A stretch of DNA of 64,000 nt, taken from contig CDMY01000258.1 of NCBI GenBank assembly GCA_001179505.1, forward strand, positions 83,042 through 147,041. Reading direction: 5' to 3'. This DNA is from Vitrella brassicaformis CCMP3155 (Eukaryota > Protista > Chromerida). Under the pieces are notes generated by a model. That model had not been told where the DNA came from, made no database searches, and saw nothing but the letters and a program-made list of their open reading frames with translations. Below are positions 52,512 through 63,099 of the stretch, in pieces. Made by a program: the position numbers and the translations under genes. How positions within the stretch are numbered: position 1 is the first letter of the stretch; each line of letters begins with the position of its first letter.

Positions 52512-53745
52512 GCTGAGCGCCAAGCCCGCCAAGCCGAGGCCGACCAGCGCCTGGAGGAGATGCTGCGGGTCGAGGACGATGTCGACGAGGCTGACTTGGA
52601 GGACGACATGGTCCCCGACACCGACTGGCGCCCGCCCTGCATCCTCCGCTACGAGGCCGAGGAGGCCGCTCGCCGGCAGAAGGAGGAGGATCATCCCAAT
52701 CGGTGCCTACATTTTATATTCGTCAGACCCATTTACGAGGAGCAACGCCCGGTGAGGAGAAGAGAATGCTGCCGACATCGTCGACAGAGACGGCATGGGC
52801 TCTATCAGGAGGTAATCACTGGGTGGTCTTTCACTCCTCTCACAATGAAATTTTTGTTGTGCTGTCCTGTGCTGTTTTGTCAAATGTATCTGTGTGTTCA
52901 GCATTTGGCGTCCCCACGAGAAGAAGCGGTGCCTCGTCTGCGGCGTACGCGCACACGACCAGGTGGGTGGACTTCGAGATGGTGCACACCATCGCCGAGG
53001 CCGAAGAGCCCATCCCCCTGCCGTCCTCCATCGACCACATCGACCCGCCGCCGCCCCTCCCCCCCACTATGACCCCGCGGCCGCCCTGCGGGTCGTGGCC
53101 ACGATGGTCGACGCCGTCGCCAAGGACAGCAGCGCCGCGCCCACAACCACAGCCCAGCAGCACCACCACGGCCCCTTCAGCCGGTCGGCCGACGTGTATT
53201 CGGTCTGCTCGGTGGCGGCTGTGGTGCTGCTTGGGCCTTCGATGGATGCAGACGGCGGCCGGCGCAACCTGCAGCTCTACCACGACGGCCGGCACTTCTT
53301 CCGCGAGTCGTCCTGTGAGCCCCTCTACGACGCGCACTTCGCCGGACCGGCGAGAGAGGGGGCGGACTTCATGTGGGCGGCTCTGCGGAGGGAGCCGGCC
53401 GTCAGAGAGCAGCTGGTCACCGACTGCAGCCGCGTGGTGACCATGGAGGCCGCACCGGAGCGGTACGTTTGGCTGCTCGGCTGTGTGGAGAAGCGCTTGG
53501 AGTGAGAGGTGGAGCGAGGGGCGGAGGGGGACGAGGAGGCGATTGCGGACATCAGCATGGCGCTGACGTTGATTAGAGACGGCATGGCGCCGGATGAGGG
53601 AGATAAAAAATCACTAGAGGAAATTCTTAGGTACCCATAAGCAAAGAGAGGGGACACAGCACACAAGCGCATGGAGGGAGACATGGGAGCAATTGTGCCT
53701 GTCTGTCTGCCTGTCGGTGTGTTGGTGCAGAATCCTGTGAAGGAG
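52512..53745 (+). pseudogene. Degenerate kinase-like gene, tandem copy 2, lacking the HGD segment
   Basis: Paralogous to copy 1 (RQARQAEAD..RYEAEEAARRQ, WVDFEMVHTIAEAEE, ADVYSVCS). Frameshift at a poly-C near 53060 and an in-frame TGA at 53503. Confidence 0.75.
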
Positions 53746-53749
53746 CGGC

Positions 53750-54200
53750 TGCTGCTGCTCAGGCATCGACGCATGCAGGAACGCACTCTCGACGTCCACT
53801 TGCTCGATATCGTAGCCCTTGGCCAGGGCCGTACCGAAGAGCAGCTTGGCTGTGGCCGTACGGCTGGTTGGAGCGTGGAGTGTCTCGTGCTCACGTTCGC
53901 CCTGGCTGCCGTTGATCACGAGCTGTGTCTTGGGCCGTCCGTCCGGCTTGGTCGTCCCCACGGCGAGGATGGAGAAGATCTGAGCGCCCCTAGGGACGTC
54001 ACGCCTTTCGCCCCACTCGTAGGTCTTGTGCTGCTCGAGCTTGTCGACCTCAGCTGGTCCACCTCGCGCCACCGTTGGTCTTCTGGGCTCAATCTCCTGA
54101 TGATTGACGGGGTGGCCTTCGTCGTCAGCCACACGCACATCGCCCTCGTGCGCCCGGAAGGCGTGCAGTTGGTGGTCGAGCGGTGTGCCGGTGGTGCCGT
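53750..54200 (-). mobile_element. Ty1/copia reverse transcriptase N-terminal fragment
   Basis: EVDKLEQHKTYEW..VPRGAQIF..KPDGRPKTQLVING..HAPT..AKLLFGTALAKGYDIEQVDVESAFLHA matches the RVT_2 pattern. Confidence 0.85.
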
Positions 54201-54989
54201 TCATGTCGCCTCAGGTATCGCCGCCAAAATGACGTCAGCAGCGGGGTCTTGGGGAGACACCACGCCCCCCTCCACCACCACACAGGCGGCCAAGAAGGCC
54301 GCCTCCTCCTTCTGACCACCCAAGCTCCTCTTGGCCTGGTCCGGCTGATATTGTGCAGGCAGTGCGTCACGTCAGTCAGCTTGAGGAAGAGGGCGGGCAG
54401 AGGGCCACCGCCGGCGCGTGAAGATAGCCACGACCGGCCTGGCCATGATGGAAAAGACACCTACAGGTAACTGACACCTACCTACCTACCCGCACCAGAC
54501 ACCTCGCCACCCGCATCGCATACCACGCCCTCTCCCCCTGGCATGCTATACTATGAATGTGTTGGCTTCAGTCAGTCAAGAAAGATGAGCCCGACCGTCG
54601 ACAACGGCGAGCTGCCTTCTGAGAGCAAGACGCCCTGCCTCGATGTGCAGCCCCAGGGCCCTCGACGCTGCCGCCGAAGCCTTCCAGGACCAGGGGGAGG
54701 CCAACCGACCCGACGCCACAGGCAGGGGCCACACCCGCACCTGCCCACACCAGAGCGGCCCATGACAGTGCGCATGTCATGTCGACGGGCGGCCGGATGT
54801 CCCTCACGGAGAGCGCCGCAATGCCGATGGCGGAGAGGACGGGGACACAGCAGCGGTCCCACGACGCGTCGACCTATCGCCGGCTGACCACACAGGCACA
54901 TCGCTCAGTGTGCTGCCTCCACGTGACGATCCAGGTGCGAGCGGTGGGCACCCATCCCCTGACAGTCTCTCTGTCTGTCTGTCTGTCTG

Positions 54990-55205
54990 TCTGTCTGGTG
55001 TGCGTCGAATGTCTGCCGCCATTGCCACGCGTGTGCCATCCGGACACACCGACCACTGCGGCAAGAGTTGACTCTTTCTTAGAGAACGTCTGTCTGTCTG
55101 TCTGTGGATCCTCGTGTCGTCTCTGTGTCTGTCTGTCTGTCTGTCTGGCTGTCTGTCTGTCTGTCTGTCTGTCTGGCACGGCTGCATTGAATTCTGTGGT
55201 GTCTG
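54990..55205 (+). repeat. Dispersed ~200 bp repeat, copy 2
   Basis: Matches 27588-27785. Confidence 0.9.
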
Positions 55206-56116
55206 TCTGTCGTGTGTCGTTGGTTGACTGGCCGCTATCTCACTGCGTGACGCGTTACTTTTTTGGTCCATCCATCCATCGATTTGTGGGACGGTGGCTG
55301 AGGGTTCGTCGCCCGCCCCCCACGCTCCTACACACAGCCTCACACTGCTGGCGGCAGGGCGGTGGTGTGCTAAGTACCTACGGGATGATGGGGGCGAGCA
55401 GGCAGGCAGGCAGTGTGTGCAATCAACAGAAAAGCTCGGCCGCTGTGGGTGAGCGGGGCGGAGGGTGGTTTGGTTGGTCACAGACCGACCCTCTCACGGG
55501 CTTACTAACTGAGTTTCTCACGGACAATTTGTTGATGCAATCAGCAGTGGTCTCCGCCGACTGTTTGCTATGGCGTCCGTCCCGCAGTAGGTGTGGAGAG
55601 GAGGGCGGTAGATAATCGCTGTCTGCGTTTTATATCCCGTTGTCCGTGTCTTTTGAAAGAAAGGTTGACTTCGTCGCTGTCTGCATTTTTGTATTCGCTG
55701 TATGAGTCTGTGCGGCCCGTCCACGTACATCTTTCTTCTACATCAATGGATACATCAACTTTAACCATAAGGACCTTCCAGTATGTGCCATGCAATGAAT
55801 TCCGGCGCGTCATGTGTTGTTGTAACAGCCGTATGACGCTCCCTGCCTGCATGATCCATGCTTGTGGATGGATGGGTGCAATCCAAGCACGATCGCTCTG
55901 CGAGCTTGAAGCCGATGCTTTCAAAGACGCCAGGCTGAGTGATCGCTGCTGTCGGGTGCCTGCCAGTGACTCATCCTTACTGGTCGACGCTCAGCTAGTT
56001 CATTCAAGTAAGTGATGCAGCAGAATCATGGACTCACTCACTTGGGCAGCAAGTCGTCGTTGCTTCCTCTGTGTGTGCCCCCGGCCAGTGATGGGCGAAC
56101 CGGAAATCGAGCGAAG

Positions 56117-59100
56117 ATGAGAGGGGTCCGGCCCCTGCTGTCTTCATCGCGCCGCCTCGAACCAAGCTGCAGCACACTTCCGACTCAACCACGCACCTCA
56201 TCCACCTCGTCCAATTCCATCGCTTGCAACGATGTGTCTTCGCAGCCACCTATCACCCTTCTGCGAGATCTGAGGAACGTGAGGAAGGGCGAGGACCCCG
56301 CAGCTGATACACATGCTGCTGCTGCTGCGGCTATGCGGCGGTCTATCAACCGGCAGCTGCTGGCTTGTCGAGACCACGCCTGCATCCTCTCGACAATCGA
56401 GGCGCATTTGCAGCATGGTGGTCATGCCCTGTCGGCCGATGAGTTTGACTGTGTCAATGCCGCGACGGCCTTCCAGCGGATGGCAAAGATGAGCACTGCG
56501 GCAAGGGAGCCGACACGCCCACGCAGGAGAGGCTCGATGTTCCGGCTGCACCCGCATCACGAAGGGGAGGCCCCGCGTGACACATCTGAAGGCGCCGATT
56601 CGTCTGCTTTGGTGGCGCAGTGGACACATGACAGCCGCTATGCCCCCCTCAGACAGCATCTGCTCAGCTTTCTCTCTCTCTCGCACTCATCTTGTGTCAG
56701 CTGCTCTCCAAGGTTTGTGGCCATGGTTCTGTGGGGGACAGCCAAGGCTAAGCTGTGGGACGAGGAGCTCATCAAGGCCCTGTGCAGAGCCGCTCGACAG
56801 CTGCTGGATAGGCGAGGGGCGGCCAGATGGGAAACCACGGATATCGCAAATGTTATGTGGGCCACGGCGACGTTCTCTTCGATGAAGGCTGATGAACTTA
56901 ACGTCTATCCGCCGGGCAGTGGGGCCGCCGGAAGCACATCTTTCCCTCCCCACTGGTTCCTCCTCGAGTGTCACGGCATTCTCCCTCTTCTATGGCAAGC
57001 TGCGGAGGCCCTCCTGCCGTCTTTCTCCATCACCAACCTTTCCAACATCGGCTGGGCGTCAGTCAAGATCGCTACAGCCATCAACGAGCGGATACAGAAC
57101 CGCACAATGTCCTCTGTGATTGAAGGAGATACCACCATGTTCTTGGAGAGGCTGGGAGACGAGGCGTGCGCGTCAAGGCAGTCGACGTGGCCCTTTTCCT
57201 CTCTTGGCGAGATGCTGTGGCCGTTTGCCACTATCGGCGTCTATCCCACTCAGCTGTTGGCTGCCGTGATGAAAGAGGCTGAGGGACGATTGCAGAAGGT
57301 GATGGGTGGCCATGGCCACAGAGAGGAGGGGCTGACCGGCAAGGCGGTCATCAACCTCACCTGGAGCGTCGCAACACTCGTACAGGTGCGGTGCAACCAG
57401 CTGCAGGAGCAAGGGCAGGAAGAGGCTGAAGACTCCTCCCTTCTCGCCGATGTCCATCGCTTCATGCGGCTCGTGTCATCCCTCATTCGGCATGGTCGAC
57501 ACGTCCGCCTCAATGCAGCCGACATCAGCACGTGTCTGCGGACCTATGCGGCCGCATCAGCCCTCCCAGACTCTCCCTCACGGCGCCTCTTCATCGACGA
57601 ATGCCGTGAGCTCCACACCTACCTCGCCAGTGGCCCTCTGTCGTCCCCTCCGTTCCTCTCATCGGTATCACTCGCCTGTCTGTCCGCCGTGGTCCTCACC
57701 TATGCCGACAGTGACGTCCCCACAGACACAAGGCAGATGGTGCTTGATGCCTTGAGCACTGAGGTGGACCGACGGGTGCAGATGGGGCGGATTACCGGCC
57801 ATGGAGATCGGTTCTTTCTGGATGTGAGCAGCCTGCTCACCGGGCTGGCCAACGCCAAGAGGCTGAAGCGGGATTTGTTTGATGCCCTCGCCAGCTGTGT
57901 GCTGGGGGACGTGGTGCGGCATGCTGACAGACACGCAGCAGGAGCAGCGACAACGACAAGTGAGGGGCGAGTGGATGAGGAGAGGAGCAGCCCGGAGGCG
58001 GTGGCAGGGCCGCGAGGGATCCCTAGTGTGCTCAGCGAGACGGCACACACAATGGTAGGCTGCGGGATGGGATGAGAATGGCGACCAATACGTGACACTG
58101 TGTGCTTTAATTGCCATCAATCAGGTGTTGTACAAGCCCGCATTCTGGGTCGTGAATCCTGTCAGCCAGGGGAGGGGACACAAGGAACATGACGGTGGGG
58201 TAGAATGGACAGACAAGGCACCCCTCCCAGTCTCTGTGTAATGCTCTTTCTTGTCCTGTCCATTCAGTGTTCACCGACTGCCTATCGGCCGAGGAAATGG
58301 AGAGCAGCGCTAGCGTAGAGGTACCTCTGAACGGAGAAGCACACCGAACGTCGGCATCTGTCCACTTGTGTGTCTCTATGTGGCTGTGCGGGCCAGCCCC
58401 TGTCCGAGTGGTATCGGCGGCGGCACTCGACGCCTCTGTCGCATGACGAGGGCAGACAATTCGGCTTCGCCCACCGACTCGACATCGAAACATCTGGCCC
58501 TCTGGTGGTGGCCAAGACGATTGAGGCCTATCACTATTTGAGGCTGCTCTTCGCCGCCCAGCTCGTGCGCAAGGAGTACCTTTGCCTGTGTCATGGCAAC
58601 TTCCCCGACGGGCTCCACACAAGTGAGCTGTGAAATGGGTGGTGGATGGGAGGCTCGACTGACCCCACCAATCATCGCTCCCTGGCTGTGTCATGGTCAG
58701 TTGATGCCCGTCTGCTGACACGCAAAGACGCCAACACTGCTCAGGTCGTCTCGGAGACACACCCACATGGCAGGCCTGCGTTGACACACGTGCGGAAGCT
58801 GAGAGGCTACCGCAGTGGGCGGGGCGATGAGTACTCCCTCTGCCATGTGGAAATCATCACCGGACGCACACACCAGATACGGTCGGTGGGTCGGTGGGTC
58901 GGTGGGAAGGAAACTGCCATGTGTCATCCGCCCGATGTGTGTGTGTGCGTGTGTGCATGTTTGCTATCAGAGTTCACCTGGCGAGTGTTGGCCATCCAGT
59001 GGTGTCCGACTACTCCTATCAACCAGACGCACGCACACTCACGGCAGACAGAAACTGGTACGTGCGATAAACCGATCCCTCTGTTCGGAATGAATTATTG

Positions 59101-59278
59101 TCCTGATGCTCCGATTGTCAGGTGTCCGCGTGTGTTCCTGCACTGTTCAAAGCTGTGTTATGAGGACCCGCCGGGCCAAGAGGGCCGCCCGCCGGCCGTG
59201 CAGGAAGTCGACTGCCCCCTCCCGAGTGAGCTGCAGACCGCCCTCGACTCGCTGACGGTCGTCAGTGAGGGCGTGTGA
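56117..59278 (+). CDS. Organelle-targeted fusion of helical OPR/RAP-type repeats and an RluA-family pseudouridine synthase
   Basis: Exon 1 (56117-58054) has a Ser/Arg-rich leader, a DCVNAATAFQRMAK motif and about 8 helical repeats (e.g. IANVMWATATF, LSNIGWASVKI, VINLTWSVATL). A phase-0 intron (58055-58124) joins it to MVLYKPAFWVV, HRLDIETSGPLVVAK, ITGRTHQIRVHLASVGHPVVSDYSY and RVFLHCSKL. All junctions are in phase. Confidence 0.85.
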
Positions 59279-59886
59279 CGGGCCGAGGCAGCACGGTCGG
59301 CGGTGTGTGGCTGGGGAGTTTGTGTCTGTCGGTGAGTGCATGTCTGATGGTATGAGTGAGCGTGGTGTAGAGCCTGTGCGCGAAGCTTGTGCGCACACAT
59401 CTGACTGTCGTAAAAGTCATGACCCTGTCGATTGATCAATGCATTCATTCATTCATTCATTCAGCTTCACTGTTCTTTCCTCGTGTCGGCTGCTCTCGAT
59501 ATGAATGCATAGTGTCCAGCCGTCCGCATGCACACCACACCCAGCAGACCCAGCAGCACCACGCCGACCACCAGCACAAACAGGGCACTGCCGCCATCAC
59601 TTGCCTGAATCTGCACCTCCTGCGCCTGCACCGACGACACAAATGCTGACACCAACGCGCTGACGAGCACCAGACAGGCCATCTTCGCAGCCGCGTCACC
59701 TTGTCCACTGCAGACAGATCAGCATCATGCCTTCTCCATGCAGCACCCTTCAAGAGGCTGGGCCATCGTCACAACTACGCGCGGCGGGACGCCGTGGTTG
59801 AGAGCTCGCAGACATCTGCGAGCTTAGCAATGTGGCTGCGCATCTCCCTTTTGATCTGGTGATGGAAAGCATTGGCAGATCCATTG

Positions 59887-63099
<3,213 letters not shown>

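What the first reader, a model, noticed from the sequence alone, without database searches (positions are those of the whole stretch)
56117..59278. Helical-repeat (OPR/RAP-like) RNA-binding array fused to an RluA pseudouridine synthase
Seen: one in-phase spliced gene with a transit-peptide-like leader, about 8 repeats of 35-40 aa with an 'I/L-x-N-x-x-W-A-x-A-x-L'-like core, and an intact RluA catalytic domain (HRLD Asp, TGRTHQIR). Known: OPR/RAP repeats recognise organellar RNA in algae and myzozoans, and RluA enzymes normally choose sites by local structure or an S4 domain. Inference: a protein-guided pseudouridylase, analogous in architecture to PPR-DYW editors, possibly acting on fragmented mitochondrial rRNA or plastid RNA.
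Basis: partly seen in the sequence, partly recalled or inferred. Interest (0 to 1): 0.75.

Follow-up and report, generated by a model that had tools for sequence, protein, structure and literature searches.

The report
RNA-gripping repeat array fused to pseudouridine synthase
In the alga Vitrella brassicaformis, one expressed gene joins a chain of helical repeats, of the kind that grips RNA in mitochondria and plastids, to an apparently working enzyme that converts uridine to pseudouridine; this design is common but unstudied in dinoflagellates and their relatives.

Summary
Window 56117-59278 (+) is one seven-exon gene of Vitrella brassicaformis CCMP3155.

- **Transcripts:** Spliced contigs from three public runs carry every junction, including 58054|58125, which joins the repeat exon to the RluA exons.
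- **Start codon:** That gives 903 aa, 72 aa more than the public model (831 aa, annotated only as PF00849).
- **RluA domain:** It keeps all 26 columns that are invariant across bacterial and eukaryotic relatives, including the catalytic Asp. It has no S4 domain.
- **Repeat array:** The N-terminal part gets no Pfam hit. It is nevertheless a divergent HPR/FAST_1-type helical array. hhalign gives 96% (E 3.5e-9) to arrays of dinoflagellate fusions; all ten remote hits tested carry FAST_1; the closest solved folds are mitoribosomal and RESC helical-repeat proteins. It has 8-9 hairpins spaced 42-88 aa apart, not 35-40, and no RAP domain.
- **Relatives:** Array-RluA fusions group together in the RluA tree (moderate support), spanning Vitrella and many dinoflagellate-type sequences. 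PPR-RluA fusions arose separately.
- **Prior notes:** This scan already flagged several similar array-RluA genes on other pieces of this genome.
- **Literature:** I found no paper describing the design.
- **Function:** Guided pseudouridylation of organellar RNA, probably mitochondrial, is inferred and untested.

The parts
55919..56007 (+). 5' UTR exon (its 5' end is not defined)
   Evidence: The X6 contig starts here and is joined to 56089
56008..56088 (+). 5' UTR intron, 81 nt, GT..AG
   Evidence: Joint 56007->56089 in X6; boundaries read
56007..56120 (+). 10-codon upstream ORF. Its first ATG is created by the splice (A at 56007 plus TG at 56089-56090). Its TGA (56118-56120) overlaps the main ATG.
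   Evidence: Translation of the spliced 5' end
56117..56332 (+). 72-aa N-terminal leader, missing from the public model. It is basic, rich in Ser/Thr/Pro, and has no signal-peptide core.
   Evidence: First in-frame ATG in the mRNA, with stops upstream; composition
56444..57952 (+). Helical-repeat array of nine helix-pair units. Cores lie at 56444-56482, 56708-56749, 56834-56875, 57029-57073, 57194-57238, 57338-57379, 57515-57559, 57671-57712 and 57812-57856.
   Evidence: AF2 model is all-alpha, pLDDT 73.8. The stretch 56723-57520 aligns to dinoflagellate HPR arrays in hhalign at 96%, E 3.5e-9. Remote hits all carry FAST_1. Fold hits. Coordinates.
57953..58027 (+). Predicted disordered linker between the array and the enzyme
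   Evidence: pLDDT below 50 at P0001 541-575
58034..59275 (+). RluA-type pseudouridine synthase domain, spread over the end of exon 1 and exons 2-7. The first strand spans intron 1 (SETAHTM | VLYKPAFW).
   Evidence: PF00849 7.7e-25; TIGR00005 5e-36; RluC 1xpi 1.5e-16; alignment A3
58055..58124 (+).
   Evidence: Joint in X1, X6 and X7
58195..58267 (+). Intron 2 (73 nt)
58321..58396 (+). Intron 3 (76 nt)
58623..58700 (+). Intron 4 (78 nt)
58882..58970 (+). Intron 5 (89 nt)
   Evidence: Adjacent contig pieces 58701-58880 and 58970-59056 are contiguous within the records (table 8)
59058..59121 (+). Intron 6 (64 nt)
58481..58483 (+). Codon of the catalytic Asp (HRLD; residue 716 of the 903-aa model, 644 of P0001)
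   Evidence: Invariant column in A3; codon read
59276..59278 (+). Stop codon TGA

Best explanation
This is an expressed nuclear gene for a 903-aa protein with three parts. First comes a basic, presequence-like leader. Second comes a divergent HPR/FAST_1-type alpha-solenoid of about nine helix pairs. Third comes a complete RluA-family pseudouridine synthase.

The array sits where bacterial RluC/RluD enzymes carry their S4 RNA-binding domain. The most likely working model is that the array binds a particular organellar RNA segment and so places the catalytic domain on nearby uridines, which it isomerises to pseudouridine. The most probable substrates are pieces of the fragmented mitochondrial rRNA, during ribosome assembly. 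On this view the protein is a covalent version of the human mitochondrial pairing of FASTKD2 (helical repeats) with RPUSD3/RPUSD4.

Shown: gene structure, expression of the fused mRNA, domain identities, conservation of catalytic residues, and kinship with other array-RluA fusions. Inferred: RNA binding by the array, catalytic activity, the compartment and the target.
For: - **Fused mRNA:** spliced contigs from three runs carry all junctions.
- **Domain continuity:** the exon 1 / intron 1 boundary lies inside the first strand of the RluA domain, so exon 1 is needed for a complete enzyme.
- **RluA identity:** PF00849 at 88 bits. All 26 invariant columns are kept, including the Asp of HRLD, the Tyr of KEY and GRTHQIR. 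The nearest solved relatives are the rRNA enzymes RluC and RluD.
- **No S4 domain:** the bacterial rows in A3 have one; this protein does not.
- **Array, sequence evidence:** only 11 hits in 1.84 billion representatives. All ten tested carry FAST_1 and six carry RAP. hhalign gives 96%, E 3.5e-9, to arrays found only through their RluA domain.
- **Array, fold evidence:** AF2 gives an all-alpha model at pLDDT 73.8. The top PDB folds are T. gondii mitoribosomal helical-repeat proteins, trypanosome RESC6/8 and chlorophycean mitoribosome proteins. Atlas structure hits are RESC6/FAST_1/RAP clusters at TM 0.54-0.61.
- **Family:** the RluA tree puts all 14 array fusions in one group, with this protein as the first branch.
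- **Leader:** basic, acid-poor, with no signal-peptide core.
- **Literature:** HPR proteins bind organellar RNA, and Vitrella is reported to have 70 of them (PMC6212722). FASTKD2 sits in a module with RPUSD3/4 and TRUB2 and was proposed as its specificity determinant (PMC5737537).
Against: - Pfam's FAST_1, RESC6 and RAP models give no hit on the array even at E<=10.
- A small 37-aa repeat HMM scored the array no better than shuffled sequence.
- Repeat spacing is irregular, and four of the nine units lack the Trp core.
- No orthologue of the array was found, so conservation of the putative RNA-binding surface cannot be judged.
- No targeting predictor was available. Relatives in the same RluA group carry SAP domains, and the sister group carries UBA domains. 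These are more typical of nuclear or cytosolic proteins.
- Support for the fusion group in the tree is moderate (85/86).
- No pseudouridine map exists for Vitrella organellar RNA.
Confidence: 0.6

Rival explanations
1. The protein is a ribosome-assembly factor or structural ribosomal protein. It mainly holds or chaperones rRNA fragments, and pseudouridylation is dispensable or secondary, as proposed for some pseudouridine synthase orthologues in mitoribosome assembly.
For: The closest folds to the array are proteins built into mitoribosomes of T. gondii, Polytomella and Chlamydomonas. A preprint title describes T. brucei mt-LAF3 as a pseudouridine synthase orthologue required for mitochondrial rRNA and mRNA expression (listing; not read). 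RPUSD4 is a component of mitochondrial RNA granules (PMC5377769, title).
Against: All catalytic-motif residues are retained. This argues for continued selection on enzymatic activity. The two roles do not exclude each other.
Confidence: 0.2
2. The protein is not organellar. It acts on nuclear or cytosolic RNA, and the array serves as a general RNA- or protein-binding scaffold.
For: Members of the same RluA group carry C-terminal SAP domains (P0104, P0096). The sister group, including Vitrella P0007, carries UBA domains or long low-complexity tails. The targeting of the leader was not tested.
Against: According to the literature read here, HPR/FAST_1/OPR arrays are organellar RNA binders (PMC6212722, PMC5737537). 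The leader is basic and acid-poor. The best fold matches are all mitochondrial RNA-binding proteins.
Confidence: 0.12
3. The protein is plastid-targeted and acts on plastid rRNA, tRNA or mRNA.
For: Another array-RluA paralogue in this genome was noted by the scan as having a plastid-type tag (unchecked).
Against: From general knowledge, proteins sent to complex plastids of chromerids start with a hydrophobic signal peptide. Here the highest 10-residue Kyte-Doolittle mean in the first 60 residues is 0.73. In-frame stops in the 5' exon rule out a longer N-terminus.
Confidence: 0.06
4. These are two separate genes, or an assembly or annotation artefact: an array-only protein ending at TGA 58075 and a separately started RluA gene.
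For: The exon-1 frame ends at 58075 if intron 1 is kept. Run X8 shows unspliced sequence, probably DNA.
Against: The junction 58054|58125 is present in three runs. There is no ATG between the stop at 58056-58058 and the start of exon 2 in its frame. The first RluA strand begins in exon 1. Relatives have the same order of parts.
Confidence: 0.02

Closest known systems
Unstudied FAST_1/RESC6 + PseudoU_synth_2 fusion proteins of dinoflagellates and Vitrella (for example P0002, P0104, P0133 of Symbiodinium necroappetens, P0150 of S. kawagutii, and the Vitrella paralogue P0003)
   Same: Same order of parts, with the helical array N-terminal and RluA C-terminal. Same RluA group in the tree. The arrays are homologous (hhalign 96% for this protein, 99% for P0003). 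They share motifs at the start of the domain (YKPPFW) and before FLH (WCPR).
   Different: The dinoflagellate arrays are regular 37-aa repeats that Pfam recognises, with 2-13 units. Here the units are degenerate, 42-65 aa apart and invisible to Pfam. Identity in the RluA domain is only 35-42%. Some relatives add SAP domains.
Human FASTKD2 with RPUSD3/RPUSD4/TRUB2 (the mitochondrial pseudouridine synthase module)
   Same: A FAST/HPR-type helical-repeat RNA binder works together with RluA-family synthases on mitochondrial 16S rRNA and mRNAs. FASTKD2 was proposed as the specificity determinant (PMC5737537).
   Different: In humans these are separate polypeptides, and FASTKD2 ends in a RAP domain. 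Here both functions sit in one chain and there is no RAP domain. RPUSD4 is a weak sequence match to this domain (E 4.4e-5).
Bacterial RluC / RluD (23S rRNA pseudouridine synthases)
   Same: These are the closest solved catalytic domains (1xpi 1.5e-16, 1prz 1.3e-15). All catalytic motifs are shared.
   Different: The bacterial enzymes use an N-terminal S4 domain. This protein has a roughly 500-aa helical array in its place, and a longer insert between the first strand and HRLD.
HPR and RAP proteins of apicomplexans, OPR proteins of green algae, and RESC6/8 of trypanosomes
   Same: Alpha-solenoid of helix pairs with the hydrophobic-x-N-x-x-W-A-x-A core. These are the best fold matches, and the remote sequence hits carry FAST_1 and RAP.
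   Different: Those proteins have no enzyme domain, or only RAP. This one carries RluA, lacks RAP and lacks the OPR PPPEW motif.
PPR-DYW RNA editing factors of plant organelles, and dinoflagellate PPR-RluA fusions (P0008, P0010, P0012 and others)
   Same: Same design logic: a helical-repeat RNA reader covalently linked to a base-modifying enzyme. PPR-RluA proteins even share the enzyme family.
   Different: A different repeat family: no PPR hit here. The PPR-RluA catalytic domains form their own clade (100/98) next to bacterial enzymes, so that fusion arose independently.

Membership tests
RluA family pseudouridine synthases (Pfam PF00849) | PF00849 score above the gathering threshold | tested here: met
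   88.3 bits against 26.8, covering profile positions 2-152 of 152
RluA family pseudouridine synthases (Pfam PF00849) | Catalytic Asp in the HRLD motif, plus the conserved Tyr (KxY) and GRTHQIR motifs | tested here: met
   All 26 columns invariant across 19 bacterial and eukaryotic domains are kept. The Asp codon is at 58481-58483.
RluA family pseudouridine synthases (Pfam PF00849) | Full-length match to NCBIfam TIGR00005 (S4 plus catalytic domain) above its cut-off | tested here: not met
   124.5 bits against 192.7. Only profile positions 118-297 match, because the S4 part is absent.
RluA family pseudouridine synthases (Pfam PF00849) | Uridine-to-pseudouridine isomerase activity | not testable with these tools
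   Needs an enzyme assay or Psi-seq
HPR / FAST_1-type helical-repeat proteins | Pfam FAST_1 (PF06743) or RESC6 hit | tested here: not met
   No family at E<=10 on exon 1
HPR / FAST_1-type helical-repeat proteins | Significant homology to recognised HPR/FAST_1 arrays | tested here: met
   hhalign 96.1%, E 3.5e-9, over 201 columns against arrays found only through RluA. phmmer hits at E 4e-6 to 9e-4; all ten tested carry FAST_1.
HPR / FAST_1-type helical-repeat proteins | Tandem 37-aa period | tested here: not met
   Core spacing is 42-88 aa. A 37-aa unit HMM scored it no better than shuffles.
HPR / FAST_1-type helical-repeat proteins | All-alpha solenoid fold like solved HPR/OPR/RESC proteins | tested here: met
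   AF2 pLDDT 73.8, about 22 helices. Foldseek top hits are 9i05_Xj at 1.6e-6, 8fni_6, 8a22 and 7pkt chains, although TM is only 0.3-0.47. Atlas TM 0.54-0.61.
HPR / FAST_1-type helical-repeat proteins | Sequence-specific binding of organellar RNA | not testable with these tools
   Needs CLIP or pull-down
FASTK / RAP proteins | C-terminal RAP domain (PF08373) | tested here: not met
   No RAP hit. The C-terminus is RluA. It is therefore not a RAP/FASTK family member in the strict sense.
OPR proteins | 38-40 aa repeats with the PPPEW motif | tested here: not met
   No PPPEW. A single PPHW occurs.
PPR proteins | PPR motifs | tested here: not met
   No PPR family in Pfam scans of P0001, whereas P0008 scores 4e-89

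The most novel reading that the evidence does not exclude
Array-RluA proteins are an ancestral myzozoan family of protein-only, sequence-addressed pseudouridine synthases. Each paralogue's helical array would read a different short organellar RNA, such as one piece of the fragmented mitochondrial rRNA, and place Psi at a defined site. That would make them the pseudouridine counterpart of PPR-DYW editors, and direct evidence that FASTKD2-type proteins aim RPUSD enzymes.
Probability: 0.35. Interest if true: 0.8.

Novelty: new variant of a known kind. Interest (0 to 1): 0.58.

Why it matters
Site choice by stand-alone pseudouridine synthases is usually attributed to local RNA structure or small accessory domains. 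A family in which a long, modular helical-repeat array replaces the S4 domain suggests a different, possibly programmable way to aim pseudouridylation.

The fusion also supports, by gene-fusion logic, the untested proposal that human FASTKD2 directs RPUSD3/4. It offers candidates for how myzozoans modify and assemble their dozens of tiny mitochondrial rRNA pieces.

For this locus, the RNA-supported start adds a 72-aa leader that the public model lacks. That matters for any prediction of where the protein goes.

Tried and rejected
- **Pfam on exon 1:** no hit at E<=10 in two calls, so family membership had to be tested by other means.
- **Small repeat HMM:** an HMM built from the seven 37-aa repeats of P0002 gave the array a full score of 2.6 against a shuffle maximum of 6.0. 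The test was uninformative because the model is too narrow.
- **Pairwise BLASTP:** against P0002 the array gave only weak, repeated hits (E 0.001-0.005). Against P0003 and P0007 it gave nothing significant.
- **Word search with exon 1:** it found only the protein itself.
- **Supplement of the HPR paper:** not held as text, so I could not check whether this protein is among the 70 listed Vitrella HPR proteins.
- **Chromera and apicomplexans:** I could not search for orthologues directly. The capped searches returned none, which is not evidence of absence.
- **Targeting:** no targeting predictor was available.
- **Two-gene reading:** rejected on RNA evidence.
- **Start at 56015:** rejected because it lies in the 5' UTR intron.
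- **Unused allowance:** I did not use the second structure job on the full-length protein, because relative domain placement would not be reliable.
Full report
**What is there.** The window comes from Vitrella brassicaformis CCMP3155. A word search with exon 1 returned one protein, P0001 (831 aa). It is named only as an unnamed product or "Pseudouridine synthase RsuA/RluA-like domain-containing", and only PF00849 is recorded for it.

From the sequence alone I built a seven-exon model: 56117-58054, 58125-58194, 58268-58320, 58397-58622, 58701-58881, 58971-59057 and 59122-59278. It has six GT..CAG introns of 64-89 nt and an open frame of 903 codons. P0001 is identical to this model from residue 73 onward, so the public annotation already uses the same junctions but starts at the ATG at 56333.

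**Transcript evidence.** Contigs of four public runs were laid on 55700-59600.
- Three runs (X1, X6, X7; three studies) contain spliced contigs with the joints 58054|58125, 58194|58268, 58320|58397, 58622|58701 and 59057|59122.
- The sixth joint, 58881|58971, shows up as adjacent pieces that are contiguous within the records.
- The 3.2-kb contigs of X6 and X7 cover 56089-58053 without interruption and then run through all junctions to beyond 59600.
- Run X8, from the same sample as X7, is unspliced and probably DNA.
- X6 also shows a 5' UTR exon (at least 55919-56007) and an 81-nt intron (56008-56088).

In the spliced mRNA there are in-frame stops upstream of 56117, so 56117 is the first usable in-frame ATG. 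The ATG at 56015 lies in the intron.

A 10-codon upstream ORF is created across the 5' splice, and its TGA overlaps the main ATG.

Independently of the RNA data, the alignment of RluA domains shows that the first strand of the catalytic domain straddles intron 1 (SETAHTM in exon 1, VLYKPAFW in exon 2). The repeat exon and the enzyme exons therefore cannot be separate genes. In the exon-2 frame there is no Met between the stop at 58056-58058 and exon 2.

**The enzyme part.**
- PF00849 matches P0001 residues 573-756 over the whole profile at 88.3 bits against a cut-off of 26.8.
- NCBIfam places it in the RluA subfamily (TIGR00005, 5e-36). The score is below that model's full-length cut-off because only the catalytic half matches. 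RluC and RluD equivalogs follow.
- The closest solved chains are E. coli RluC (1.5e-16) and RluD, then RPUSD1, RluA and, weakly, RPUSD4.
- In a 19-sequence alignment with bacterial S4-containing enzymes, PPR fusions and eukaryotic relatives, this protein keeps all 26 invariant columns. These include R-L-D of HRLD, S-G, the Tyr of KEY, T-G-R-x-H-Q-I-R, G-x-P...D..Y and R..L-H.
- The catalytic Asp is residue 716 of the 903-aa model, codon 58481-58483.
- There is no S4 domain.

**The repeat part.** Pfam gives nothing on exon 1 even at E<=10. Four other lines of evidence place it among HPR/FAST_1-type arrays.
1. An exhaustive phmmer search of 1.84 billion representatives found only 11 relatives (E 4e-6 to 9e-4), each matched in several stretches. 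All ten that I scanned carry FAST_1, and six also carry RAP.
2. Arrays of eight dinoflagellate-type fusion proteins were found solely through their RluA domains, so they are independent of this N-terminus. They form a profile to which residues 131-396 of P0001 align with 96.1% probability and E 3.5e-9 over 201 columns. The Vitrella paralogue P0003 aligns at 99.1%, E 4e-19.
3. AlphaFold2, using an alignment of these arrays, gives an all-alpha model of about 22 helices with pLDDT 73.8 and pTM 0.71. Its best PDB matches are helical-repeat proteins of the T. gondii mitoribosome (9i05_Xj at 1.6e-6, also Xd, Xl, Xq), trypanosome RESC6/RESC8 chains, and Polytomella and Chlamydomonas mitoribosome proteins. 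TM-scores are low (0.3-0.47), as expected for flexible solenoids, so the ranking counts for more than the superposition.
4. The ESM Atlas model of this protein matches clusters annotated RESC6/FAST_1/RAP at TM 0.54-0.61.

I count nine helix-pair units. Five keep the Trp-containing core: VLWGTAKA, VMWATATF, IGWASVKI, MLWPFATI and LTWSVATL. Four are degenerate.

There is no RAP domain and no OPR-type PPPEW motif. A narrow 37-aa HMM built from P0002 did not separate the array from shuffles.

**Relatives and history.** Region searches with the RluA part found several groups.
- A Vitrella paralogue with FAST_1 plus RluA (P0003, 1118 aa).
- A metagenomic protein with seven perfect 37-aa repeats plus RluA (P0002).
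- Many dinoflagellate-type proteins with FAST_1/RESC6 plus PF00849, including P0133 from Symbiodinium necroappetens and P0150 from S. kawagutii. They have 2-13 recognisable repeats N-terminal of the enzyme.
- Atlas clusters with this domain pair have 51-150 members.

A maximum-likelihood tree of 64 RluA domains gives a eukaryote-only clade (96/93). It splits into a group with UBA-bearing or long-tailed proteins, including Vitrella P0007, and a 23-row group (85/86) that holds all 14 array fusions. This protein is the first branch in that group and P0003 the second.

Nine rows in that group have no recognised repeats. One complete member, P0101, still aligns to the last array module. A single old fusion in the common ancestor of chromerids and dinoflagellates is therefore the simplest reading. 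Support is moderate and the root is only a midpoint.

Dinoflagellate PPR-RluA fusions form a separate clade (100/98) beside bacterial S4-RluC/D enzymes, so that fusion arose independently.

**Earlier notes of this scan.** Several other helical-array plus RluA genes are listed on other pieces of this genome. Their follow-ups also report common dinoflagellate fusions and no paper. I confirmed those two points independently. I did not examine the other loci.

**Literature.**
- Hillebrand et al. 2018 defined the 37-aa HPR motif, counted 70 HPR proteins in Vitrella, and linked HPRs to human FASTK proteins. Their main text does not mention pseudouridine (PMC6212722).
- The FASTK review reports FASTKD2 in a module with RPUSD3, RPUSD4 and TRUB2. 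It speculates that FASTKD2 gives that module its RNA specificity, and that FASTK proteins may recruit RNA-modifying enzymes (PMC5737537).
- Searches combining heptatricopeptide, octotricopeptide, pentatricopeptide or helical repeat with pseudouridine synthase found no description of such fusions.
- A 2026 HPR survey of 57 genomes and a 2026 review of dinoflagellate RNA-binding proteins also say nothing on this.
- The library is limited to open papers, so absence there is not proof.

**How it most likely works.** The array takes the place of S4 as the RNA-recognition module and tethers the RluA domain to particular RNAs, through a roughly 25-residue disordered linker.

The leader has 5 Arg/Lys, 1 Asp/Glu and 11 Ser/Thr in its first 30 residues and no hydrophobic core. 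From general knowledge this fits a mitochondrial presequence better than the signal-peptide-first leaders of chromerid plastid proteins. No predictor was run, and relatives with SAP or UBA domains warn against certainty.

The nearest catalytic relatives act on large-subunit rRNA, and the nearest array folds sit on fragmented mitochondrial rRNAs. Fragmented mitochondrial rRNA is therefore the leading candidate target. RNA binding, activity, compartment and target are all inferred.

**Verdict.** The locus is a divergent, Pfam-invisible member of an unstudied but widespread myzozoan family. It is best described as a new variant of the known design of helical-repeat reader plus RNA-modifying enzyme. 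Its uniqueness is reduced by the public annotation, the many relatives and the sister loci already flagged. The family as a whole remains worth experimental attention.

Noticed in passing
window 55919-56120: The transcript has a 5' UTR intron (56008-56088). A 10-codon upstream ORF has its first ATG formed by the splice and its TGA overlapping the main ATG (ATGA). This could couple termination to re-initiation.
   Followed up: partly
window 56117-56332: The public protein model starts at 56333 and lacks the 72-aa basic leader that the RNA-supported first ATG adds. Any targeting prediction made on the public model would miss it.
   Followed up: yes
P0008, P0010, P0012, P0013, P0015, P0018, P0019, P0035, P0039: Dinoflagellates (Polarella, Symbiodinium, Durusdinium) encode PPR-array plus RluA fusions. 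Their catalytic domains form a separate clade next to bacterial RluC/D. I found no paper on them.
   Followed up: partly
Atlas clusters: RESC6/FAST_1-type arrays also occur fused to an MTS methyltransferase (haptophyte-type, 127 members) and to a FAD-binding monooxygenase (chlorophyte-type, 76 members). Array-plus-enzyme fusions may therefore be a wider theme.
   Followed up: no
P0104, P0096; P0005, P0006: Some relatives of the same RluA clade carry C-terminal SAP domains. The sister group carries UBA domains. This raises the question of whether all members are organellar.
   Followed up: no
window 53614-54204 (-): An ORF with a reverse-transcriptase-like stretch (…VDVESAFLHA…) resembles Ty1/copia-type elements. 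This rests on memory only.
   Followed up: no
window about 54870-55300: A tetranucleotide (CAGA/GTCT-type) microsatellite reads as runs of TDRQ or VCLS in several frames.
   Followed up: no
window about 60650-62312 (+): The downstream gene is intron-rich and has two AAA+ Walker A boxes ([16 protein letters not shown]), like CDC48/NVL-type ATPases.
   Followed up: no
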